64,000 bases of DNA from Haliotis rufescens (taxonomy: Eukaryota). A model generated the notes under the pieces. It was not told the origin of the DNA. It did not search any database and worked only from the letters and a program-made list of their open reading frames with translations. This document shows, in pieces, positions 25,370-52,986 of the stretch. Position 1 is the stretch's first letter, and every line of letters begins with the position of its first letter. The position numbers were made by a program, and so were the translations under genes. The stretch is taken from the NCBI RefSeq assembly GCF_023055435.1, contig NW_025964392.1, positions 434,001-498,000 on the forward strand. The letters run 5' to 3'.

Positions 25370-28051
25370 GAGTGAGTGAGTTAATATTTAAAGTCACATC
25401 GGTAATATTTCAGCCATATAGTGACTACATCAAATTATACAATACATCAATTTAGAATACAAACCTGTCGACAAAGGACAGTAAAAGAACTAGATTATCA
25501 CAGATGTAGGTTTAAAACTAGTAAATCACAATAAAACTTGACTGTTCATACAATACCATGCAAGGTAAAACTGGGCTATATATCACCAGCAACCTAAAGG
25601 TAGACCACCATGCTGAGGACCATGGGGACTTATAGTACCTTTGCTACCTGCATAGACCCTGGCAGGATTAACACCATCCCTTCAGTTGCTGGTGATTATG
25701 GAGAAGTTTAGCCAAAATTAAAACAAACAGATATTCTATGTTTAAAAACCTGGTATATATTAAATACTTTGACTACGCACCCTCTCTGGGGGACAATAAT
25801 TTTTACGCTGCTTCAACCCCCATCAAGGGTACAACCACTAACAGTCTCAGTTCATAATCATATACTACAAATTTATAAAATAATTCACTAAATACATCAA
25901 AATTTATGAATAAGTTCAATTTCTTTTAAAAAACATATTAAATGAGAACTATCATCATTAAAAAGGTCCTTAATTGTTTTAACACTGAAATATTTATCCC
26001 TTGTGATGGGAAAAAGCAACTGCGCCACCATCCTTGGATCCATCTGTAAATAAAGATTTATAAGTGTCGTATGTGTTTCGCAATTGATTGTATTCTTGTT
26101 TATAAATTAGTGGATTAGTATCAGATATCTTAAGTCTCATTAATGTGAGGTCTACATTTGGCCTTACCATTTGCCAAGAAGGCCATGAAAACAGTTGTAT
26201 GGCAGCTTTATCATGAAACTTAATCTTAGCAGCAGAAACAGAAATGACAGATTTAATTCTTATTCCAACTGTTGGAACAAGAGATGATTTCTTATTGTAA
26301 ATATCTTCATAAAGAGGATTAAACACACAATTAAAGGTGGATTTGACTGATTAGAATATAATTTAGTGATGTATTGTAAAGATAATTCCAGATGGCATTG
26401 TATAAGAGAAAGCTCATCCGCTTCAACAGAGAGACTTGGAATAGGAGAAGTACGAAAGGCTCTCAGGCCTTGGTGATGGACAGTATCCAGTTTTTGTAAG
26501 TTACTTTTACATGCTCCACCATAAACGATGGAGCAGTAATCAAGTTAAAGAACAGGTTAATGACCTGTATAAGTGTAAGAGTGTTGTCTGATCTCCTCCC
26601 CACTTTGATTTAGATACAACTTTCAACAATTCGAGTGCCTTCAGACATCTTGCTTTAAGTGCCTTAATATGTGGTAGGAACGTTAAATGGCTATCAAAGA
26701 TGAGTCCCAAGAATTTGGCCTCCTTTAAACTTCAAAAATAATTCAGGGTCTTTATGCGGCTTATATTTTCTGCCGAAGTGTATACAGTTACTTTCTGATG
26801 TAGAAAATTTAAACCCGTTTTGAAGAGACCACTTGTGAATTTTTAGACAGATTTGTAACTGTCTCTCATTGCACGCATATTTTTACCACGAGATTTATTA
26901 AAATCATCCACGAAAAGTGATCCATCCACTGACTGAATCACTTATAACCTTCGAAAGACTATTTATTTTTATACTAAATAAAGTGACAGACAAAATACTG
27001 CCTTGCGGGACACCCTGATCCTGATTTTAATGATCAGACTTGAAATTGCCTGTCAGATAAAAATTGTGATATGAAATGAGGTAAACGACCTCGCAAGCCC
27101 AAATCATTTAAGTCCTTTATAATGCCATGCTTCCAGGTAGCATCATATGCTTTCTCAAGATCAAAGAAAATGGATACTACGTGTTGTTTATTAACTATGG
27201 CATTTTTAACAAAGGATTCCAATCGTACTAAATGATCAGTAGTACTTCGATTTTTGCGGAAACCACATTGAATATTGGTAAGATCATTACTTTCCAGATA
27301 CCAAACTAATCTATTGTTCACCAGTCGTTCCATAGTTCTGCAAACGCAACTGGATAAAGAGATAGGGCGGTTATTTGAAGGATCCGCGTGATTCCGGCCA
27401 GGTGTTCGTATGGGGACTACAATGGCAACATACCACAAAGGTGGAAAATTCCCCGACGTCCATATTTGGTAAAGAATATCTAGAAGTGTCTCAAGACATG
27501 ATTCAGGCAAATGCTTTAATAACTGATAGTGAATATTATTATCCCCTGCTGCAGTATCATGAGCTTGCTCAAGAGCAATATGCAGCTCATGCAATGAAAA
27601 TACTTCATTGTAATCTTCACCATCACTGGAATCAAAATTAACCTTTTATTTTCCTGTTGTTTCTGATGTCTCTGAAACTCAGGGACATGATCTGTTGATG
27701 AAGAATGTTTGGCAAGAGTTTCGCCAAGTTTATTTGCAATGGCAGATTGATCAGTTATTAATGTGTCACCATCTTTGAGGTGGTTAACAGACGATTTGGA
27801 ACCTTTGCCTTTTATTTTTTTAACCATGTTCCACATCTTTGACATGGGTGTGCGTGAGTTAATTTTTGAGACAAAATTCCTCCATGATTGACGCTTATTT
27901 TGTTTATAAGCCCGTCGTGCTTTGGCACAAGTAAATTGAACATTATTTAGGTTGTGAACTGTAGGATGTTTGCGGAATTCTGTTTCTGCTTTCTTCCTAC
28001 TCTTCCTTGTTGTTTGCATTCATTGGTAAACCATGGTTTACGAACATGAGG
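25369..28051 (-). mobile_element. Older degenerate Nimb-like LINE (RT/RNase H remnants); continues at 33840-33920
   Basis: Frameshifted RPISLSSC, FFDLEKAYD and FTDGSK motifs; 3' UTR and (CACT)n tail; the reading frame resumes beyond the nested insertion (IADKTIPKSSANPHVRKPW). Confidence 0.9.
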
Positions 28052-28227
28052 TGAGTGAGTGAATATTGCTTAACGCCGCATCAGCAATTTTGCAGCTATT
28101 CGCGGCGAGAAATGTCTTTTTTGTAATCAGATATCAACCAATAGAATAAAAGTGATGTTGAAAATCACTAAAATCTCAGTCATATATCACATTCAGAGGT
28201 AAAAGACTGACTGTTCAGGTAAAAAAT

Positions 28228-31200
28228 CTATATTTTATCATAGAGCTTGATTTCCTTTAAATACGCTAAAATCAAGTGATTAGAAACTGTGGTAAAAAGT
28301 TCAGATAAGGTACGAACATTATCATAAAAACGTTGCCTGACAAGTGCAAAATCAACACATTCCAGCAGAATGTGCTTCATAGTAAGAGGGCTATGGCAAG
28401 GTATACAAAAAGGTGGATCTTCACCCTTCAATAAAAATGAATGTGTACAATAACTGTGGCCAATGCGGCACCGCTGCAAAACAACTTCATCATGACGATA
28501 TAAACCAGAATGGGCGTGACCACCAATCAGTGGTTTGATAGCATGAAGTTTGTTCATAGTCTTGGTATTCCAACTTTTTTGCCAATGGTCATTCACATAT
28601 TGTCTGATGGAAGGTTTTAGATCAGAATATGGGAAGTTTGTGTTGGAAATTGGTTTATTAAGAGCAGCTTTTGCCGAAGAATCTGCTTTACAGTTACCAC
28701 TGATGCCAACATGACTGGGCAGCCAACAAAAAATTATATCTTTTCCAGCTACGGATAAATTGAGATGACACCTTAAAATTTCAGCTAAAAATGGATGATC
28801 CACTTTTCGATTTTTGATGGCCTGTAAACAGGACAAACTATCAGATAATATGAGAAAACTGCTTTTAGAAGACTGTTCAATATATTGCAAAGCTAATAAT
28901 ATAGCCTGAGCTTCTGCCGTAAATATCGAACTTCCGTCAGTTATACGCATAGACACTGTATAATTGTTAGCAACAGCTGCAGCAGACACCTTTTCATCAT
29001 CTTTTGAACCATCAGTGTAAATACTTGTATAAGAGGAATATCGGTTCTTCAGTTCATGAAATTCTTGTTGATAAAATAATTGATTAGTGTCAGACTTCTT
29101 CAGGTTCGCTAATTCTAAATTAACAGCAGGTTGTATCGATTGCCAAGGAGGCATTTCTGAGATTTTGTATTCAGCAATGGCAGAGAGATTTAAATGAGCA
29201 TCCTTGATATGGGATTGCATGCGAATTCCAAGTGGTGGGATTGTGTTTGGATTTCTTATATATAAATGCTGGTATGGAGCATTGAAGATATTGTTAAATG
29301 CTGGATTAGAAGGATGAGAGCAGAGTTTAGTGATATATTGTAATGCCAGTTTTATTCGTCTTAAGCAAAGACTGGGTTCATTGGCTTCCACATATAGACT
29401 TTCAATTGGCGATGTCCTAAATGCTCCAAGACACAACCGAAGACCCTGATTGTGAATAGTGTCAAGGACTTGAATGTATGATTTACGAGCTGAGCCATAA
29501 ATGAAGCAGCCGTAATCAAGTTTAGACCTTATCAAAGTTCTATAGAGATGTAATAGTGTTTCTCTATCACCACCCCACCTAGTATTTGACACTACCTTTA
29601 AAATGTCAAGCGCCTTCAAACATCTAGCTTTAAGATTTTTAATGTGGGGTATAAATGATAACTTTTGATCAAAGGTAATACCTAAAAACTTGGTTTCTTT
29701 GACCACTTTTATTGGAGTATTATTTAAAGTCAATTCAGGATCTTTATGCAGTTTCCGTTTATTGCAAAAATGAACACAGCAGGTTTTAGTTTTGGAAAAC
29801 TTAAAACCATTTTCTAAGGCCCATTTCTGTATTTTATTGAGACAAAGCTGTAACTGTCTCTCAATGCTATTCATATTTGCACCACAGCATGAAACATTAA
29901 AATCGTCAACAAACAACGAACCATCAATATTTTCATTTAAAACTTGAGCAAGACTGTTGATTTTAATGCTAAAAAGTGTCACTGATAAAATACTGCCCTG
30001 AGGGACCCCCATTTCCTGATCATATATCTCGGACAATGTGGATCCAACTCTAACTTTAAATTTTCTATCTTCTAAAAAGCGAGTGATGAAATCAGGCATA
30101 CGGCCACGTATACCCATGTCGTGGAGATCTTTTAATATACCATACTTCCACGTGGTATCGTAAGCCTTCTCAAGATCAAAAAAGATCGACACAACATGTT
30201 GCTTGTTTACAAAGCCATTCCGTACAAATGATTCCAATCGGACAAGATGATCGATGGTGCTCCTGTTGTGTCTAAAACCACACTGAATGTCTGTGATCAG
30301 ATTATTTGATTCAAGAAACCAAACGAGACGCCGGTTAATCATCCGTTCCATGGTTTTACAGAGACAACTTGTCAGAGCAATAGGTCTGTAATTAGAAGAA
30401 TCTGTGTGATCTTTACCAGGTTTAGGCACAGGTATTACAGTAGCCTCATGCCAGGAAGGAGGGAAGTTACCATTTTCCCATATACTATTAAATATGGATA
30501 AAAGGGTTAAAAGAGAAGTCTCAGGAAGATGTTTCAAAAATTGATAATGTACGTCATTTGGACCAGAAGCTGTATCATGAGCCTTGTTCAAAGCCTCTTG
30601 TAACTCAGTCAACGAAAAGGATTCATTATAATCCTCTGCATTATCAGACCGAAAATTCAGAGTTTTCCTTTCCTGCTGATTTTGAAATTTTTGAAATTTT
30701 GGGTCATAGTTGCTAGAGGAGGAATTTTGGCTGAACGTTTCTGCCAACTTATTAGCAATATCCTGTTTTGATGTCAATACATCATGATTAGATTGTAGAT
30801 GCTGAATATTGCTCTGTGACCCCTTTCCTTTTATCTTTCTTATCATATTCCATACTTTATTAAGGGGTGTACGAGAATTTATTTTTGAAACAAACTTTTT
30901 CCAGCTTGAACGTCTATTTTGTTTAATTGTTCTACGAGCCTTTGCTCTTGACATTCTTAAGCAGTTTAAATTATTGGCAGTTGGGTGTTTATTAAACACT
31001 CTTTCAGACTTTTTCCTATTTTTCCGAGCTTTTCTACAATCGTCATTATACCATGGTGTTTTTACATGTGGATTTGTCGAGGTCTTAGGAATAGTTTCTG
31101 TGGCAATGTTGATTAATTTATCCGAAAATGATCTGATCTGATCAGGATCATCAATAAAATTTTCAAAGGTTAATTTATCACTGCACATTGTACTAAAGGT

Positions 31201-31914
31201 TTGCCAATCTGCCTTGTTGAGTTTCCATTTAGTAATGGGTGGGTCCTGACAAGGAACGATAGTTTTGAGTAAGGTTGGGAAATGATCACTCCCACAAAGG
31301 TCATCATGTACTGACCATGAGAACTCATCTAAAAGAGACGGATCAGCAAAGGCTAAATCAAGAGCTGAGTAAGTACCAGTCGCTGGATGTAAATACGTGT
31401 TGCTACCATCATTAAATAGACAGAGATCATGCTTCTGGAGCAACTCTTCGAGTATTTTCCCTTTATGATTTTGATCACCCGAACCCCATAATGGGTTGTG
31501 ACCATTTAGATCGCCCATAAGCAAAAATGGCTTAGGAAGTTGGGTGATAAGAGTATCTAAATCTTTTATCTGAAGTGCAGTGGATGGAGGTAAATACAGA
31601 GAACATAAAGTAATAGCAATATGCAGAGTTAATCGTACTGCAACTGCCTGTAGGTTGGTATTTAGCGGTATAGCACTGTGTAATGTTCCTTGTCGAACGA
31701 GTACACTGGCACCACCCGTTCTTTTACTATTGGTAACCCTTGCATATGAATGAAACATATGATATTGACGGAAGTCAATATTATCGCAATCTCTTAAATA
31801 TGTTTCTTGAAGACTAAAAGCCACAGGATTAAATTCCTTAGATAGAAGTTTAACCTCATCAAAATTCGCCCTAAGCCCTCGACAGTTCCATTGTATAATA
31901 GTGTTATTATGCAT
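28228..31914 (-). CDS. LINE ORF2: AP endonuclease - reverse transcriptase - RNase H - C-terminal Cys/His motif (1228 aa)
   Basis: QWNCRGL, LQET, GDLN, SDHFP; GVPQGSILS, FVDD; YTDGSK...AE...SDS...WLPSHVGISGN. Confidence 0.96.
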   Translation of the reverse strand: MHNNTIIQWNCRGLRANFDEVKLLSKEFNPVAFSLQETYLRDCDNIDFRQYHMFHSYARVTNSKRTGGASVLVRQGTLHSAIPLNTNLQAVAVRLTLHIAITLCSLYLPPSTALQIKDLDTLITQLPKPFLLMGDLNGHNPLWGSGDQNHKGKILEELLQKHDLCLFNDGSNTYLHPATGTYSALDLAFADPSLLDEFSWSVHDDLCGSDHFPTLLKTIVPCQDPPITKWKLNKADWQTFSTMCSDKLTFENFIDDPDQIRSFSDKLINIATETIPKTSTNPHVKTPWYNDDCRKARKNRKKSERVFNKHPTANNLNCLRMSRAKARRTIKQNRRSSWKKFVSKINSRTPLNKVWNMIRKIKGKGSQSNIQHLQSNHDVLTSKQDIANKLAETFSQNSSSSNYDPKFQKFQNQQERKTLNFRSDNAEDYNESFSLTELQEALNKAHDTASGPNDVHYQFLKHLPETSLLTLLSIFNSIWENGNFPPSWHEATVIPVPKPGKDHTDSSNYRPIALTSCLCKTMERMINRRLVWFLESNNLITDIQCGFRHNRSTIDHLVRLESFVRNGFVNKQHVVSIFFDLEKAYDTTWKYGILKDLHDMGIRGRMPDFITRFLEDRKFKVRVGSTLSEIYDQEMGVPQGSILSVTLFSIKINSLAQVLNENIDGSLFVDDFNVSCCGANMNSIERQLQLCLNKIQKWALENGFKFSKTKTCCVHFCNKRKLHKDPELTLNNTPIKVVKETKFLGITFDQKLSFIPHIKNLKARCLKALDILKVVSNTRWGGDRETLLHLYRTLIRSKLDYGCFIYGSARKSYIQVLDTIHNQGLRLCLGAFRTSPIESLYVEANEPSLCLRRIKLALQYITKLCSHPSNPAFNNIFNAPYQHLYIRNPNTIPPLGIRMQSHIKDAHLNLSAIAEYKISEMPPWQSIQPAVNLELANLKKSDTNQLFYQQEFHELKNRYSSYTSIYTDGSKDDEKVSAAAVANNYTVSMRITDGSSIFTAEAQAILLALQYIEQSSKSSFLILSDSLSCLQAIKNRKVDHPFLAEILRCHLNLSVAGKDIIFCWLPSHVGISGNCKADSSAKAALNKPISNTNFPYSDLKPSIRQYVNDHWQKSWNTKTMNKLHAIKPLIGGHAHSGLYRHDEVVLQRCRIGHSYCTHSFLLKGEDPPFCIPCHSPLTMKHILLECVDFALVRQRFYDNVRTLSELFTTVSNHLILAYLKEIKLYDKI

Positions 31915-33140
31915 TATGGTGCACTGACAGGAGACCTTTCACGGCCTTTTTTCCTAGGGGAATGGCTTCTTGATCGTGTGTTTTGTGGAGAAGACACATC
32001 CATGTCCTCGAACACACCAAACCTATTAAACATAGTAACAGGATCTCTTTGACCCTTAGGGAGACGATCTGATTTGCCTTTGTTTTTTGAGTAATCAACA
32101 TTTGGATTTGATTTCTTAGCTGGTTTTTGGGTAGGTGTTTGAGAACTGGCAGTTTCTAAGACAATTGCTGAATTAGCAGAAAGTGAAAGTATTTCAGGTG
32201 ATTCCGTTGAGGTCCATGTGTAATCTGTCTGACATCCGACAGTTGTGTGTGAAACAGGCTGGGGAACAGGCCGTGTACTTGGTCGTGAAACAGCTGCAGA
32301 GTAAGAATTTCGAACACACTGTTCTTCATCTAAAACAATTTTCTTAGCATCTTGAAAAGAGATGTTCCGCTCATGTTTGACTTTGACAACCTTTGACTCG
32401 CGTTTCCATACTGGACATTCTTTTGAGGAGGAAACATGGTTACCGCCACAATTCACACATGAGGGATCTTTATCACACTCAGAACCATCTGCACAATTGC
32501 CACCACAGCGATGACAAGCAGCCTGTTTGTCGCATGCTCTGGAACCATGTCCATAGTGTTGACATTTGTAGCATCTCAATGGATTTGGTATGTACATATC
32601 AACCTTGATACTACAATATCCTGCTCGAATTGAAGTTGGAAGAGTCGGAGTACCAAAAGTAAACAGGTACGTATTGGTCTTGGTGACCTCACCATTTCTC
32701 TTTGAAGTAAACCGTTTCACAGAGAGAACATGTTGGCTTTTGAGTTCTTCAAGGATATCTTCTTCACTCATATCAGCCAGGAATCTACCTCTGTCTCGTA
32801 CTATTCCCTTGCTGCTATTTAGTGACCTATGCGGAGAAACCACAACGGGAACATTTGCCAGTGACTTTATGGACAGAAGGCTAACTGCTTGTTTGTGTCT
32901 CTTACATTTTATCAGCAAACACCCACTACGTAGTCTTTTGGCATCTTCGACATCTCCAGCTATGCCTTGTATAGCCTTCTCAACGGCAAATGGGTTAAGC
33001 TTAAGAGGTGAACCATCCAAAGCAGAAATGACTAGAAATCTGGGCCAGTTTTCAAAAGTGACAGTAGCCTGCGGACGAACGTCCTCAGTACCAAACGAAT
33101 CATCTGAATCATGGGAACGTTTTTTCATAGGGGGTTCCAT
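31914..33140 (-). CDS. LINE ORF1, gag-like nucleic-acid-binding protein (408 aa)
   Basis: YIPNPLRCYKCQHYGHGSRAC and CVNCGGNHVSSSKECP zinc knuckles; stop codon overlaps the ORF2 start (TAATG). Confidence 0.94.
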   Translation of the reverse strand: MEPPMKKRSHDSDDSFGTEDVRPQATVTFENWPRFLVISALDGSPLKLNPFAVEKAIQGIAGDVEDAKRLRSGCLLIKCKRHKQAVSLLSIKSLANVPVVVSPHRSLNSSKGIVRDRGRFLADMSEEDILEELKSQHVLSVKRFTSKRNGEVTKTNTYLFTFGTPTLPTSIRAGYCSIKVDMYIPNPLRCYKCQHYGHGSRACDKQAACHRCGGNCADGSECDKDPSCVNCGGNHVSSSKECPVWKRESKVVKVKHERNISFQDAKKIVLDEEQCVRNSYSAAVSRPSTRPVPQPVSHTTVGCQTDYTWTSTESPEILSLSANSAIVLETASSQTPTQKPAKKSNPNVDYSKNKGKSDRLPKGQRDPVTMFNRFGVFEDMDVSSPQNTRSRSHSPRKKGRERSPVSAP

Positions 33141-33768
33141 GGTGGTAGTGATTATGTTTCACCCTCTTGGCTCCCCACCCACCATGGAGTATCAACAAGG
33201 ACGATGCCATACACCTGTGGGCCTCCGACAGGTGACACCAAGGATACCAAGAGGGTATACTCAAGCAGAAGCATCAAAAAATGTTCCACCGGATTGGCCC
33301 ATGAGCCACCGCCTTCTGGGCATTATGACTCTAGGCAAACATAGCAATGTTCAAGTAATTCTTGATTTTATAATTTCAAACAATAGATGTCTACACGAAA
33401 ATGAGTGTAACAGGAGATGGTTCTATTAGTTAAAGAACATCTGAAGTCAAATTGATCAGTACAATAAATTGAAATATAGCTCATGACCACCGAAATTGTG
33501 CAAATGAAATTAAACGCACAGGGCATGGCATGACCAGCCGATTGATAGGACCGGGCCCATCCTACCACCCGTCTAGGCGAAGTAAGGGTCGAAGTGGTGT
33601 ATTGGGCAAAGGAACGCTATTCCTGGAACCATTGCCCTCAACCACCAGACTCCCGTCCTCCGCCGACACAGGGACGCAACCCACGGCAAACAGGTTGCCC
33701 ATTTTAGTCGCCTCATACGACCAGCAATGGGAGGCTGTGGAAATATTCTGCCCCGGTTCCACACGGGG

Positions 33769-33826
33769 GAAGAGCGATTAGCGTTACCCAGCACTCACCA
33801 CGAGGAGGTTGCTCTTCACGAGTGCC
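33769..33826 (-). ncRNA. Minimal HDV-like self-cleaving ribozyme at the LINE 5' end
   Basis: GGCACUC-GU-GAAGAGC-A-ACC-UCCUCGU-GGU-GAGUGCU-GG-GUAAC-GCUAAUC-GCUCUUC gives P1 (with G1-U wobble), P2, P3, L3, P1.1 and a J4/2 C; G1 abuts the TSD. Confidence 0.88.
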
Positions 33827-33924
33827 TACGAACATGAGGATTTGCAGAGGACTTTGGAATTGTTTTGTCAGCAATACTATTTAGTTGACCCGAAAACAAC
33901 TGTATTGGATCTGAAATGTCCGTC

Positions 33925-39088: not shown

Positions 39089-39130
39089 ATCGCTTCTTGG
39101 CCTTTTGGCTAAGATCAAAGTGTAGTATCT
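39089..39130 (+). ncRNA. U2: U2 snRNA 5' fragment (first ~42 nt), non-functional
   Basis: ATCGCTTCTTGGCCTTTTGGCTAAGATCAAAGTGTAGTATCT matches the conserved U2 5' end, including the branch-point recognition sequence GTAGTA. Confidence 0.95.
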
Positions 39131-39768
39131 TGACCGAATTCTCAGGGGATGACGGTGGACTTTTGTGTTGACTCTTGGATTCGTGGATTTGCGGAGGTGA
39201 TTTTATTGTGTGCTCACTTTTTGCAGGTCTTCCAGCTGGTACTGTCACTTTTTAAGTCAGATTAGATTTGACGACAAAACCCCACTGGGACAGGGCTGGC
39301 AGTGATGCGGAGAGTGTGGCGAGTGAGAAGAAACATTTGGAGATTGAAAAAGAGTACCAGAGACAGGAGGGGAGAGAGAACGACATGAGAGAGAGAAAGA
39401 GGTTACCCTCGGGGTAAGGGGATGTCCGGTTACCCTCGGGGTAAGGGGACGTCACGGAAAAGTAGGGGCCTGGTCCAGGGACTCTGGAGATAGGAAGAAA
39501 CGGCGTTCATATTCCTCGCAGACAGTGTCCCCGGAGTCGGAAAGGTGTCCACCAGTGTGAGAGGTGTTGCCCCCATTGATCCCGGCATTGATCACCATCA
39601 CTCTTTTTATGTATAATTTCGTTTCATCACAACCAGGATATGAGCTTTTCCTGGAAGGTGACTATTTATTGTGTGTTTTTCCCCCTCAGGTCTACGGGTG
39701 GGTACAGGTACCTTGAGTACCCGAGGACCTCTAGTGGTCACCCGGCCCTCACATTTCCAGTATGGCAG

Positions 39769-51639: not shown

Positions 51640-52986
51640 ACCACATCGATGACACACCACAGAGCTGCGACACGATTAAGAACCCTGGCCAAACTGTTGA
51701 CATACACCTCCACCCTGATGTTAAAATATCCACCGTGGAATTGATGTGCAGGCAAAAGTTAGCAAGTAAGTACTTGTTTGGCTGATAACACCTTCCACTT
51801 TTTTGGTGAAATGCTTAACAGCTGTTACACCCTGATCCTCTAGTTCAGGTTGAATCTCTTGTTCGGACATATCAGAAAGGCAACATGCTCGGTCTCGAAC
51901 AATGCCCCGACATGAGTTTAGTGTCCTGTGAGCAGACACAACAACCTCAACTGTGTTACTGACAAAAGATTTAGAGATTGCTGTCTGTGGTCACACTCCA
52001 CAAGAAGAGAGCTAGTCCGAAGACGAGTTACATTTCTCACCTCTCCACAAATTCTTGATACAGCAAAAGTATTTTATTTAATTGGTTCATGATCAGAAGC
52101 CTCAATCACCAAGAACTGAGACCAGGAATCTATATTTTGTGATTTTGTGTTAGTGTTTTCATTTGAACTGTCGCGTTCAAGATGTCTCTTTTTTCGTTTC
52201 GAATTGAACCAGAGTGCGTGAGTGACATGGTGAAATATATAGGTTCAACACCCCTGGTCCTCACCCGCCATCGAGTGTCAACAAGGACAGTGTTACATTG
52301 CACCGGATATCTAAGATGCAAACACCAGGGATACAGGGATGTTATACTCTAGCAAATATGACACAAATAGCAATATTTGTATACCAAATTAAATGCCAGG
52401 CCGGTTCGGCCGATGACAAGTAATTGGATACATACTGAATTTGGAGGTCAACATTACCAGATTGGCCCATGAGCCACCGCCTTCTGGCATAAGACCCAAG
52501 GGAAACTTTTACATAATAATTTGGGAAGTCTAACAAGTAACACATGACCAAGACCAAACAATACATTCATATAAATCACGTTTGTGCATACACAATATTA
52601 TGCACAGGGCTTGGCATGACCAGCCGATTGATAAGAGCGGGCCCATCCTACCACCCACATACAACTTTTGATCCTTTCCATAATCATTTTGTGGAATATA
52701 AGTACATATATATTCAAAATCAAAGTTGACCAGCCGATTGATAGAACTGGGCCCATTCTACCAGCCGTCTAGGTGAAGTCGGGGTCAAAGTGGTTTGTTG
52801 GGCAAAAGGAACACCACCAGAATCCCTTCCTCCATCGACACGCAACCCACGGCAAACAGGTTGCCCAATTTAGTCGCCTCATACAACCAGGGGTGCTGTG
52901 GACACATTCACCCCGGGTCCACACAGGGGAAGAGCTATTAGCATTACCCAGCACTCACCACGTGGAGGTTGCTCTTTACGGGTGCC
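51640..52986 (-). mobile_element. Degenerate Nimb-like LINE 5' portion (ribozyme, 5' UTR, ORF1 remnant)
   Basis: HRTLNSCRGIVRDR; 5' UTR colinear with 33150-33826. Confidence 0.85.
52929..52986 (-). ncRNA. Second, diverged HDV-like ribozyme copy
   Basis: GGCACCC-GU-AAAGAGC-A-ACC-UCCACGU-GGU-GAGUGCU-GG-GUAAU-GCUAAUA-GCUCUUC; one P1 mismatch. Confidence 0.75.

What the first reader, a model, noticed from the sequence alone, without database searches (positions are those of the whole stretch)
33769..33826. Minimal (P4-less) HDV-like ribozyme defines the exact 5' end of an intact Nimb/I-group LINE
Seen: the first 58 nt of the element (minus strand) form the complete HDV nested double pseudoknot. 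P1 is GGCACUC/GAGUGCU with the G1-U wobble, P2 is GAAGAGC/GCUCUUC, P3 is ACC/GGU, L3 is UCCUCGU, P1.1 is CC/GG, and J4/2 is GCUAA with the candidate catalytic C. P4 is reduced to GUAAC. The predicted cleavage site (5' of G1) coincides to the base with the boundary of the 13-bp TSD. Known: HDV-like ribozymes process the 5' ends of R2, RTE and L1Tc/ingi-type elements, and P4-less forms are known mainly from microbial/phage sequence. Inference: this LINE cuts itself out of read-through transcripts, which would let it be expressed from inside nested TE clusters. I do not know whether it has been described for this clade.
Basis: partly seen in the sequence, partly recalled or inferred. Interest (0 to 1): 0.92.

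Follow-up and report, generated by a model that had tools for sequence, protein, structure and literature searches.

The report
Minimal HDV-like ribozyme heading abalone LINE
The first 58 bases of an intact jumping gene (a LINE) fold into a stripped-down copy of the hepatitis-delta self-cutting RNA. It very probably trims the element's RNA to its exact first base. This is a well-supported example of a mechanism already known from other LINEs, and apparently already noted in abalone.

Summary
Minus strand 33826-33769 has every element of the HDV nested double pseudoknot, with 5 nt in place of P4. G1 abuts a 13-bp target-site duplication of an intact 5.8-kb LINE that encodes endonuclease, reverse transcriptase and RNase H.

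Chance is excluded. Shuffles give 0.03 such minimal hits per window, and this one sits on the element's first base.

About 75 other copies in the same 1.33-Gb genome start at the same G with unrelated flanks. At least 12 LINE families with diverged ORF1 share the same head.

Related LINEs from metagenomes (48-56% ORF2 identity) carry HDV-like ribozymes at the matching position. Their P1, P2 and P3 sequences are entirely different but still pair, and the core nucleotides are conserved. One more is P4-less.

Self-cleavage is inferred, not shown; the public read data did not decide it.

Novelty is modest. HDV-like ribozymes at LINE 5' ends are established for R2, R4, RTE, Baggins and L1Tc. P4-less forms are reported in silkmoth R2. 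[quoted passage not shown] An earlier scan note calls this genome red abalone. First readers of this scan flagged the same motif on at least eight other pieces of this genome.

The parts
33769..33826 (-). 58-nt P4-less HDV-like ribozyme. Predicted cleavage is 5' of G at 33826.
   Evidence: Sequence; RF02682 full-model alignment at 28.5 bits; descriptor hit and shuffle control
33820..33826 (-). P1 5' strand GGCACUC; pairs with 33790-33796 (GAGUGCU), with a G1-U wobble
   Evidence: invariant in the copies examined
33811..33817 (-). P2 5' strand GAAGAGC; pairs with 33769-33775 (GCUCUUC)
   Evidence: P2 differs completely but still pairs in relatives
33797..33809 (-). P3 (ACC/GGU) closing L3 UCCUCGU. 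The two Cs at 33804-33805 pair with the GG at 33788-33789 to form P1.1.
   Evidence: UCC in L3 and the GG are invariant in all six relatives' ribozymes
33776..33787 (-). GUAAC in place of P4, then J4/2 GCUAA (candidate catalytic C at 33781) and a UC linker
   Evidence: J4/2 reads CUAA or CUGA in relatives; variation among copies sits in the linker and at J4/2 position 3
33827..33839 (-). 5' copy of the 13-bp target-site duplication CCTCATGTTCGTA
28039..28051 (-). 3' copy of the target-site duplication
28052..33826 (-). Full-length LINE of about 5775 bp, ending in a short (CACT)n tail at about 28052-28061. It is inserted in sense orientation inside the ORF2 of another LINE.
31914..33140 (-). 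ORF1, 408 aa, intact, no Pfam match
28228..31914 (-). ORF2, 1228 aa, intact: AP endonuclease, reverse transcriptase, a weak RNase H-like match, and a C-terminal CCHC motif
   Evidence: Pfam; homologues carry PF00075 RNase H; conserved C/H columns
33497..33826 (-). Roughly 330-nt 5' head (ribozyme plus downstream leader). It is 91.5-96% identical between LINE families whose remaining 5' UTR is 70-88% identical or unalignable.
   Evidence: Positions about 90-307 are also 68-74% identical to relatives found in bivalve-associated contigs.
33751..33768 (-). Hairpin CCCCG-loop-CGGGG immediately 3' of P2; the stem is kept in relative L145

Best explanation
The first 58 nt of this LINE's RNA are a minimal (P4-less) HDV-like self-cleaving ribozyme. 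When the element is transcribed as part of a longer RNA, the ribozyme folds and cuts 5' of G1. Here the element sits in sense inside another LINE; other copies sit directly behind another copy's tail. Cleavage releases a LINE RNA whose 5'-OH end is the element's first base. Full-length reverse transcripts therefore all begin at that G.

Shown: the fold; its exact position at the 5' end; the uniform 5' end of copies; conservation across families; covariation in relatives.

Inferred: catalysis, co-transcriptional timing, and any added role in translation or in the roughly 330-nt conserved head.
For: (1) All HDV core features are present, including an L3 that nearly matches HDV's own. Rfam HDV models align end to end from G1.

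(2) The shuffle control expects 0.029 minimal hits per window; one is observed, on the first base after the TSD.

(3) About 75 copies from many contigs begin at GGCACUC with unrelated flanks. Only 2 of 28 copies have a G just before G1, so there is no sign of a cap-derived extra G.

(4) In 12 of 16 sampled LINE families with diverged ORF1, the same ribozyme heads the element at 95-100% identity. In an older, diverged copy (L037), the six differences fall in J1/2, the outermost P2 pair, L3 position 4, J4/2 (CUAA to CUGA) and the linker.

(5) Relatives with 48-56% ORF2 identity carry HDV-like ribozymes on the coding strand 1.65-2.06 kb upstream of ORF2: L076, L064, L073, L082, L087 and L080. P1, P2 and P3 sequences are different but pair. 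UCC in L3, the GG, and CU(A/G)A are kept.

(6) Contig L076 starts at G1 and contig L080 at nt 2 of their ribozymes. The flanks of L082 and L114 diverge exactly at P1.

(7) L073 and L080, about 85% identical, differ by a compensatory A-U to G-C change in P3. This was found by homology, not by the descriptor.

(8) Rfam independently flags L073:1070 and L087:819.
Against: - No cleavage data exist for this sequence.
- Rfam scores are below gathering thresholds (28.5 against 44; 23.6 against 50).
- The relatives' ribozymes were found with a descriptor that demands pairing, so "all pairs standard" is partly by construction.
- Some relatives reaching that region show no ribozyme. L145 is homologous only from position 59 onward, with nothing recognisable upstream.
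- Conservation extends about 270 nt beyond the ribozyme, so part of the head's constraint is something else, possibly a promoter.
- Read data cannot separate cleavage from many DNA copies with different flanks. Contigs running past G1 into varied sequence exist in run X10.
Confidence: 0.8

Rival explanations
1. The conserved 5' head is mainly an internal RNA polymerase II promoter that starts transcription at G1. The HDV-like fold is then secondary or inactive. The uniform 5' end would come from initiation, not cleavage.
For: - Conservation covers about 330 nt, not just 58.
- Positions 90-307 are kept in bivalve-associated relatives.
- Matetovici et al. 2016 (PMC4758252) interpreted a roughly 70-bp head shared by Nimb LINEs and mollusc SINEs as a "LINE promoter".
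- I-like LINEs generally have internal promoters (textbook knowledge).
- The L1Tc head is both promoter and ribozyme (PMC3383444).
Against: A DNA-level promoter does not explain relatives with unrelated primary sequence that keep P1, P2 and P3 pairing and the catalytic-core nucleotides at the same position. A promoter and a ribozyme can coexist, so this is more a complement than an exclusive rival.
Confidence: 0.12
2. The fold is a real, selected RNA structure but is catalytically dead without P4. It would serve as a 5' structural cap, a translation element or a protein-binding site.
For: P4 stabilises HDV-like ribozymes (PMC3774820). There is no activity data for this sequence. HDV-like ribozymes have been proposed to promote translation of uncapped LINE RNA (PMC6765202).
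Against: [quoted passage not shown] The J4/2 C and the L3 core would not need to be kept in a mere scaffold.
Confidence: 0.06
3. Chance resemblance to the HDV fold.
For: Sub-threshold Rfam scores. The nested-only MFE z-score is not significant.
Against: The shuffle expectation is 0.029 per window, before requiring the exact terminal position. The fold also recurs in relatives. MFE tools cannot score pseudoknots.
Confidence: 0.02

Closest known systems
HDV-like ribozymes at the 5' ends of non-LTR retrotransposons (R2, R4/Dong, RTE, Baggins/LOA, L1Tc/ingi)
   Same: The nested double-pseudoknot core is the same. The cleavage site coincides with the element's first nucleotide. The presumed role is release from co-transcripts (PMC3774820, PMC6765202, PMC3185411).
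   Different: Here the host is an I-like, probably Nimb-type, LINE of a mollusc. One nearly invariant 58-nt ribozyme heads many ORF1-divergent families. P4 is replaced by 5 nt.
[quoted passage not shown]
   Same: The description fits exactly, since GUAAC replaces P4. An earlier scan note identifies this genome as red abalone, and six organism labels in public runs hold this 5' region.
   Different: I could not read the review or see its sequence. Identity with that ribozyme, and whether it was linked to a LINE, are therefore unverified.
P4-less R2 ribozymes of silkmoths (Bombycoidea)
   Same: They are HDV-like ribozymes of a LINE that lack P4 (PMC3774820).
   Different: They have very long J1/2 loops and cut inside the 28S rRNA co-transcript. 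The R2 clade has a different endonuclease and a site-specific lifestyle.
Minimal HDV-like ribozymes from metagenomes (drz-Mtgn) and phage theta ribozymes
   Same: Both have the P4-less architecture and a size of about 55-65 nt.
   Different: Those are of microbial, phage or unknown origin, and theta ribozymes process tRNA trailers (10.1101/2023.06.13.544163). This one is in an animal LINE.
The "LINE promoter" head of Nimb-17_LMi, I-3_DR, RTE-9_CPB and the mollusc LP-SINEs (Matetovici et al. 2016, PMC4758252)
   Same: It is a roughly 68-70-bp module at the extreme 5' end of Nimb-clade LINEs, shared across otherwise unrelated elements and present in Haliotis.
   Different: It was interpreted as a promoter; a ribozyme was mentioned only by analogy with L1Tc. 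I could not obtain the sequences, so sequence identity with the module here is untested.

Membership tests
HDV-like self-cleaving ribozymes | Nested double pseudoknot: P1 (6-7 bp) starting at the cleavage site, P2, a 3-bp P3, and a 2-bp P1.1 | tested here: met
   7 + 7 + 3 + 2 pairs, all standard, with one G-U at position 1
HDV-like self-cleaving ribozymes | Catalytic cytosine in J4/2 and a conserved L3 core (U-C-C..C-G) | tested here: met
   C at 33781 in GCUAA; L3 is UCCUCGU. Both are kept in six relatives' ribozymes and in the family masters.
HDV-like self-cleaving ribozymes | Score above the Rfam gathering threshold (RF00094, RF02682, RF01787) | tested here: not met
   28.5 against 44, 23.6 against 50, and 12.5 against 37 bits. 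The shortfall comes mainly from the absent P4. No hit in the gathering-threshold scan.
HDV-like self-cleaving ribozymes | Covariation supporting the helices | tested here: met
   Double-sided changes occur in nearly all P1, P2 and P3 columns among six ribozymes. There is a homology-found A-U to G-C change between L073 and L080. Caveat: five of the six were found with a pairing-based descriptor.
HDV-like self-cleaving ribozymes | P4 helix | tested here: not met
   Only GUAAC lies between P1.1 and J4/2. P4 is known to be dispensable (PMC3774820), so this defines the minimal subtype rather than excluding membership.
HDV-like self-cleaving ribozymes | [quoted passage not shown] | not testable with these tools
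   Needs an in vitro assay or 5'-OH-specific RNA sequencing.
LINE 5'-processing ribozymes | The cleavage site coincides with the 5' end of full-length copies, with varying upstream flanks | tested here: met
   covering about 75 copies. There is one exception, with a variant first 9 nt (L030).
LINE 5'-processing ribozymes | Evidence of processed RNA in vivo | tested here: inconclusive
   depth drops at G1 in three runs guessed to be RNA. In X10 it peaks about 100-fold over the first ~90 nt. The run kinds are guesses, and many DNA copies would give the same drop. The raw miRNA-seq reads laid none.
Nimb clade / I-like LINEs | ORF2 with AP endonuclease, RT and RNase H; a separate ORF1 | tested here: met
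Nimb clade / I-like LINEs | Phylogenetic placement with reference Nimb elements (Repbase) | not testable with these tools
   No reference LINE sequences are available. The tree contains only unnamed relatives.

The most novel reading that the evidence does not exclude
This 58-nt ribozyme is the unexplained roughly 70-bp "LINE promoter" head that Matetovici et al. (2016) found shared by Nimb LINEs of locust and zebrafish, a turtle RTE, and the LP-SINEs of abalone, oysters and scallops. If so, it is a portable self-cleaving head. Unrelated LINEs and SINEs would capture it by template switching, which would make LP-SINEs the first SINE class headed by a ribozyme. It would also explain why many ORF1-divergent families in this genome share one head. 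Some "metagenomic" minimal HDV-like ribozymes of unknown origin could likewise come from animal LINEs.
Probability: 0.4. Interest if true: 0.55.

Novelty: new member of a known kind. Interest (0 to 1): 0.32.

Why it matters
The finding adds a well-documented case of ribozyme-defined LINE 5' ends in an I-like clade of molluscs. It shows that P4-bearing and P4-less forms alternate within one LINE lineage. It also offers a concrete, testable explanation for a conserved 5' head previously read as a promoter. It does not change the known picture of how HDV-like ribozymes serve retrotransposons.

Tried and rejected
- A covariance model built from the genome's own copies (R1) was too sequence-specific. 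It found only this copy and a second, degenerate one in the window (52929-52986).
- The Rfam gathering-threshold scan finds no ribozyme. Rfam E-value scans of relatives flag only two of the six ribozymes.
- Nested-only MFE folding gives non-significant z-scores. This says nothing about a pseudoknot.
I used the search for related loci instead.
- The viral-contig scan found no relatives.
- Relatives from symbiont or MAG assemblies show no canonical ribozyme. Contigs L062, L143 and L155 start at about positions 85-91 of the leader. L145 is homologous from position 59 and has nothing recognisable upstream.
- Raw miRNA-seq reads laid none.
- I looked for ribozyme-headed SINEs among 38 further genomic hits. 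All were LINE 5' ends or deletion derivatives.
- Webb & Luptak 2011, Ruminski et al. 2011 and Webb et al. 2009 are not held in the library.
- MAFFT could not place the P1 5' strands in register, so I tabulated pairs by script instead of with the count of structure pairs.

Full report
**Observation.**
- P1 is GGCACUC/GAGUGCU with a G1-U wobble.
- J1/2 is GU.
- P2 is GAAGAGC/GCUCUUC.
- P3 is ACC/GGU, closing L3 UCCUCGU.
- The GG of P1.1 faces the two L3 cytosines.
- GUAAC stands where P4 would be.
- J4/2 is GCUAA, with the candidate catalytic C at 33781.

The 13-bp duplication CCTCATGTTCGTA lies at 33839-33827 and 28051-28039. Joining the two flanks restores the reading frame of a host LINE ORF2, so the boundaries are genuine.

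The element (28052-33826, minus strand) has an intact 408-aa ORF1. Its intact 1228-aa ORF2 carries AP endonuclease, reverse transcriptase and a weak RNase H-like match. Its homologues carry Pfam RNase H.

**Is it more than chance?** At gathering thresholds Rfam reports only a U2 snRNA in the window. On 201 nt, the HDV-F-prausnitzii model aligns end to end from G1, at 28.5 bits and E=9e-4, with P4 deleted. The HDV model gives 23.6 bits. Both are below threshold.

I wrote a structure descriptor covering P1, P2, P3, P1.1, an L3 cytosine and a J4/2 cytosine. Run on 753 dinucleotide shuffles of the window, it expects 0.29 hits of this quality per window (both strands) and 0.029 of the P4-less kind. 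The real window has one, and it sits on the first base after the TSD.

**Copies in the same genome.** The assembly has 1.33 Gb in 615 contigs. The first 267 nt recur at 97-100% identity on many contigs. In about 75 copies that I read, the element begins at the same GGCACUC with unrelated upstream sequence. There is one exception with a variant first 9 nt.

Only 2 of 28 copies have a G just before G1. This is weak evidence against a cap-derived extra G.

Differences among young copies fall in L3 position 4, J4/2 position 3 and the linker.

**Many families, one head.** I searched the genome with a relative's ORF1 and fetched the upstream regions of 16 hits with different ORF1 lengths. Twelve carry the same ribozyme at their 5' end.
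- The first roughly 330 nt are 91.5-96% identical between these families.
- The rest of the leader is 70-88% identical or unalignable.

The head is therefore either strongly constrained or exchanged between families. The conserved part is larger than the ribozyme.

An older, diverged copy (L037) differs from ours at six of 58 positions. All six lie in J1/2, the outermost P2 pair, L3 position 4, J4/2 (CUAA to CUGA) or the linker.

**Relatives elsewhere.** ORF2 homologues of 50-65% identity are numerous. Named ones come from a limpet and a sea spider, and many are animal DNA inside metagenomes or symbiont assemblies of bivalves.

Where metagenome contigs reach far enough upstream, my descriptor finds HDV-like ribozymes on the coding strand, 1.65-2.06 kb before ORF2:
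- L076:1-64, which is P4-less and whose contig begins at G1;
- L064:149-232, with a short P4;
- L073:1070-1208, L082:425-558 (identical in L114) and L087:819-956, with long P4.

By homology, L080 begins at nt 2 of an L073-like ribozyme. The flanks of L082 and L114 diverge exactly at P1. Rfam independently flags L073:1070 and L087:819.

Across the six distinct ribozymes, every P1, P2 and P3 pair is standard and nearly every column shows double-sided changes. UCC in L3, the GG of P1.1, and CUAA or CUGA in J4/2 are invariant.

The caveat is that the descriptor demands pairing. The independent evidence is:
- the position and strand of the hits;
- conserved unpaired bases beyond what the descriptor required;
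- the contig and flank boundaries;
- an A-U to G-C exchange in P3 between L073 and L080, which are 85% identical.

A quick ORF2 tree puts our element next to L061 and then next to the pair L062 plus L064 (which has P4). L076 (P4-less) sits beside the P4-bearing L087, L082 and L073 group. P4 was therefore probably lost more than once, or heads were swapped. The careful tree search did not finish, so this is tentative.

Not all relatives show a ribozyme. L062, L143 and L155 start at about positions 85-91 of the leader. L145 is homologous from position 59 onward with nothing recognisable upstream.

**RNA evidence.** Six organism labels in public runs hold this 5' region. In three runs guessed to be RNA, depth ends at G1. 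In X10, a run of very short contigs, depth over the first ~90 nt is about 100 times that of the leader downstream and of the flank. Contigs running past G1 into heterogeneous sequence also exist in that run. Many DNA copies with different flanks would give the same picture, and the raw small-RNA reads laid none. This is inconclusive.

**Mechanism.** The best reading (confidence 0.8) is that the RNA folds into the double pseudoknot as it is made, the J4/2 cytosine catalyses scission 5' of G1, and the LINE RNA is freed from whatever transcript it rode in on. This copy lies in sense inside another LINE's ORF2, and several copies lie directly after another copy's CACT-repeat tail. Such contexts make read-through plausible.

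An internal promoter in the roughly 330-nt head may coexist, as in L1Tc (PMC3383444). It is the main rival for what sets the 5' end. It cannot explain the covarying fold.

**Comparison with the literature.**
- HDV-like ribozymes that cut at the 5' end of non-LTR elements are established for R2, R4/Dong, RTE, Baggins and L1Tc (PMC3774820, PMC6765202, PMC3185411).
[quoted passage not shown] I could not read that review.
- An earlier follow-up note of this scan calls this genome red abalone. I did not verify that, but the assembly size and the mollusc relatives fit. The motif here is therefore very likely the orthologue of a published one.
- Matetovici et al. 2016 (PMC4758252) described a roughly 70-bp head shared by Nimb LINEs of locust and zebrafish, a turtle RTE, and "LP-SINEs" of Haliotis and bivalves. 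They read it as a promoter. If that head is this ribozyme, their puzzle has a different answer. I could not obtain the sequences, and I found no ribozyme-headed SINE among the hits I inspected.
- No held paper combines HDV-like ribozymes with Nimb.

**Verdict.** First readers of this scan flagged the same motif on at least eight other pieces of this genome.

Noticed in passing
window 52929-52986 (-): A second, older copy of the same ribozyme head, with a P1 mismatch and a degenerate leader behind it. No long ORF follows.
   Followed up: partly
window 33497-33826 (-); L174-L189: The first roughly 330 nt of the leader are 91.5-96% identical across LINE families whose remaining 5' UTR and ORF1 are strongly diverged. 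Positions about 90-307 are also 68-74% identical to relatives in bivalve-associated contigs (L062, L143, L145, L155). Such deep conservation of a LINE leader suggests a promoter, a translation element or a protein-binding RNA.
   Followed up: partly
L183 (G000:C112:26375380-26376700, minus strand), ribozymes at 266-323 and 510-567: The first 244 nt of the head are tandemly duplicated, giving two ribozymes in one leader. The inner one has a P1 mismatch (GGCCCUC).
   Followed up: no
window 33320-33515: Contigs from three public runs skip about 192-200 nt here. This family's leader therefore carries an insertion relative to sister families or species. It coincides with the point where inter-family identity collapses.
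   Followed up: no
window 39089-39233 (+): U2 snRNA match above the Rfam gathering score (49.4 bits). It is the only gathering-level RNA hit in the window.
   Followed up: no
run X10 laid on window 33737-33828: Summed contig depth is about 3e5-1e6 over the ribozyme and the following hairpin, against about 1e4 further into the leader. This may be a stable ribozyme-derived RNA fragment or a small-RNA hotspot. The kind of run is not on record.
   Followed up: no
L114:2814-2947: A copy of the L082-type element, beginning with its ribozyme, is inserted inside the ORF2 of another related LINE. This is the same nesting pattern as in the window.
   Followed up: no
L040 and L055 upstream flanks (own genome): Some copies start directly after a (CACT)n tail of another copy. 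This is a head-to-tail arrangement in which read-through from the upstream element would need the ribozyme.
   Followed up: no
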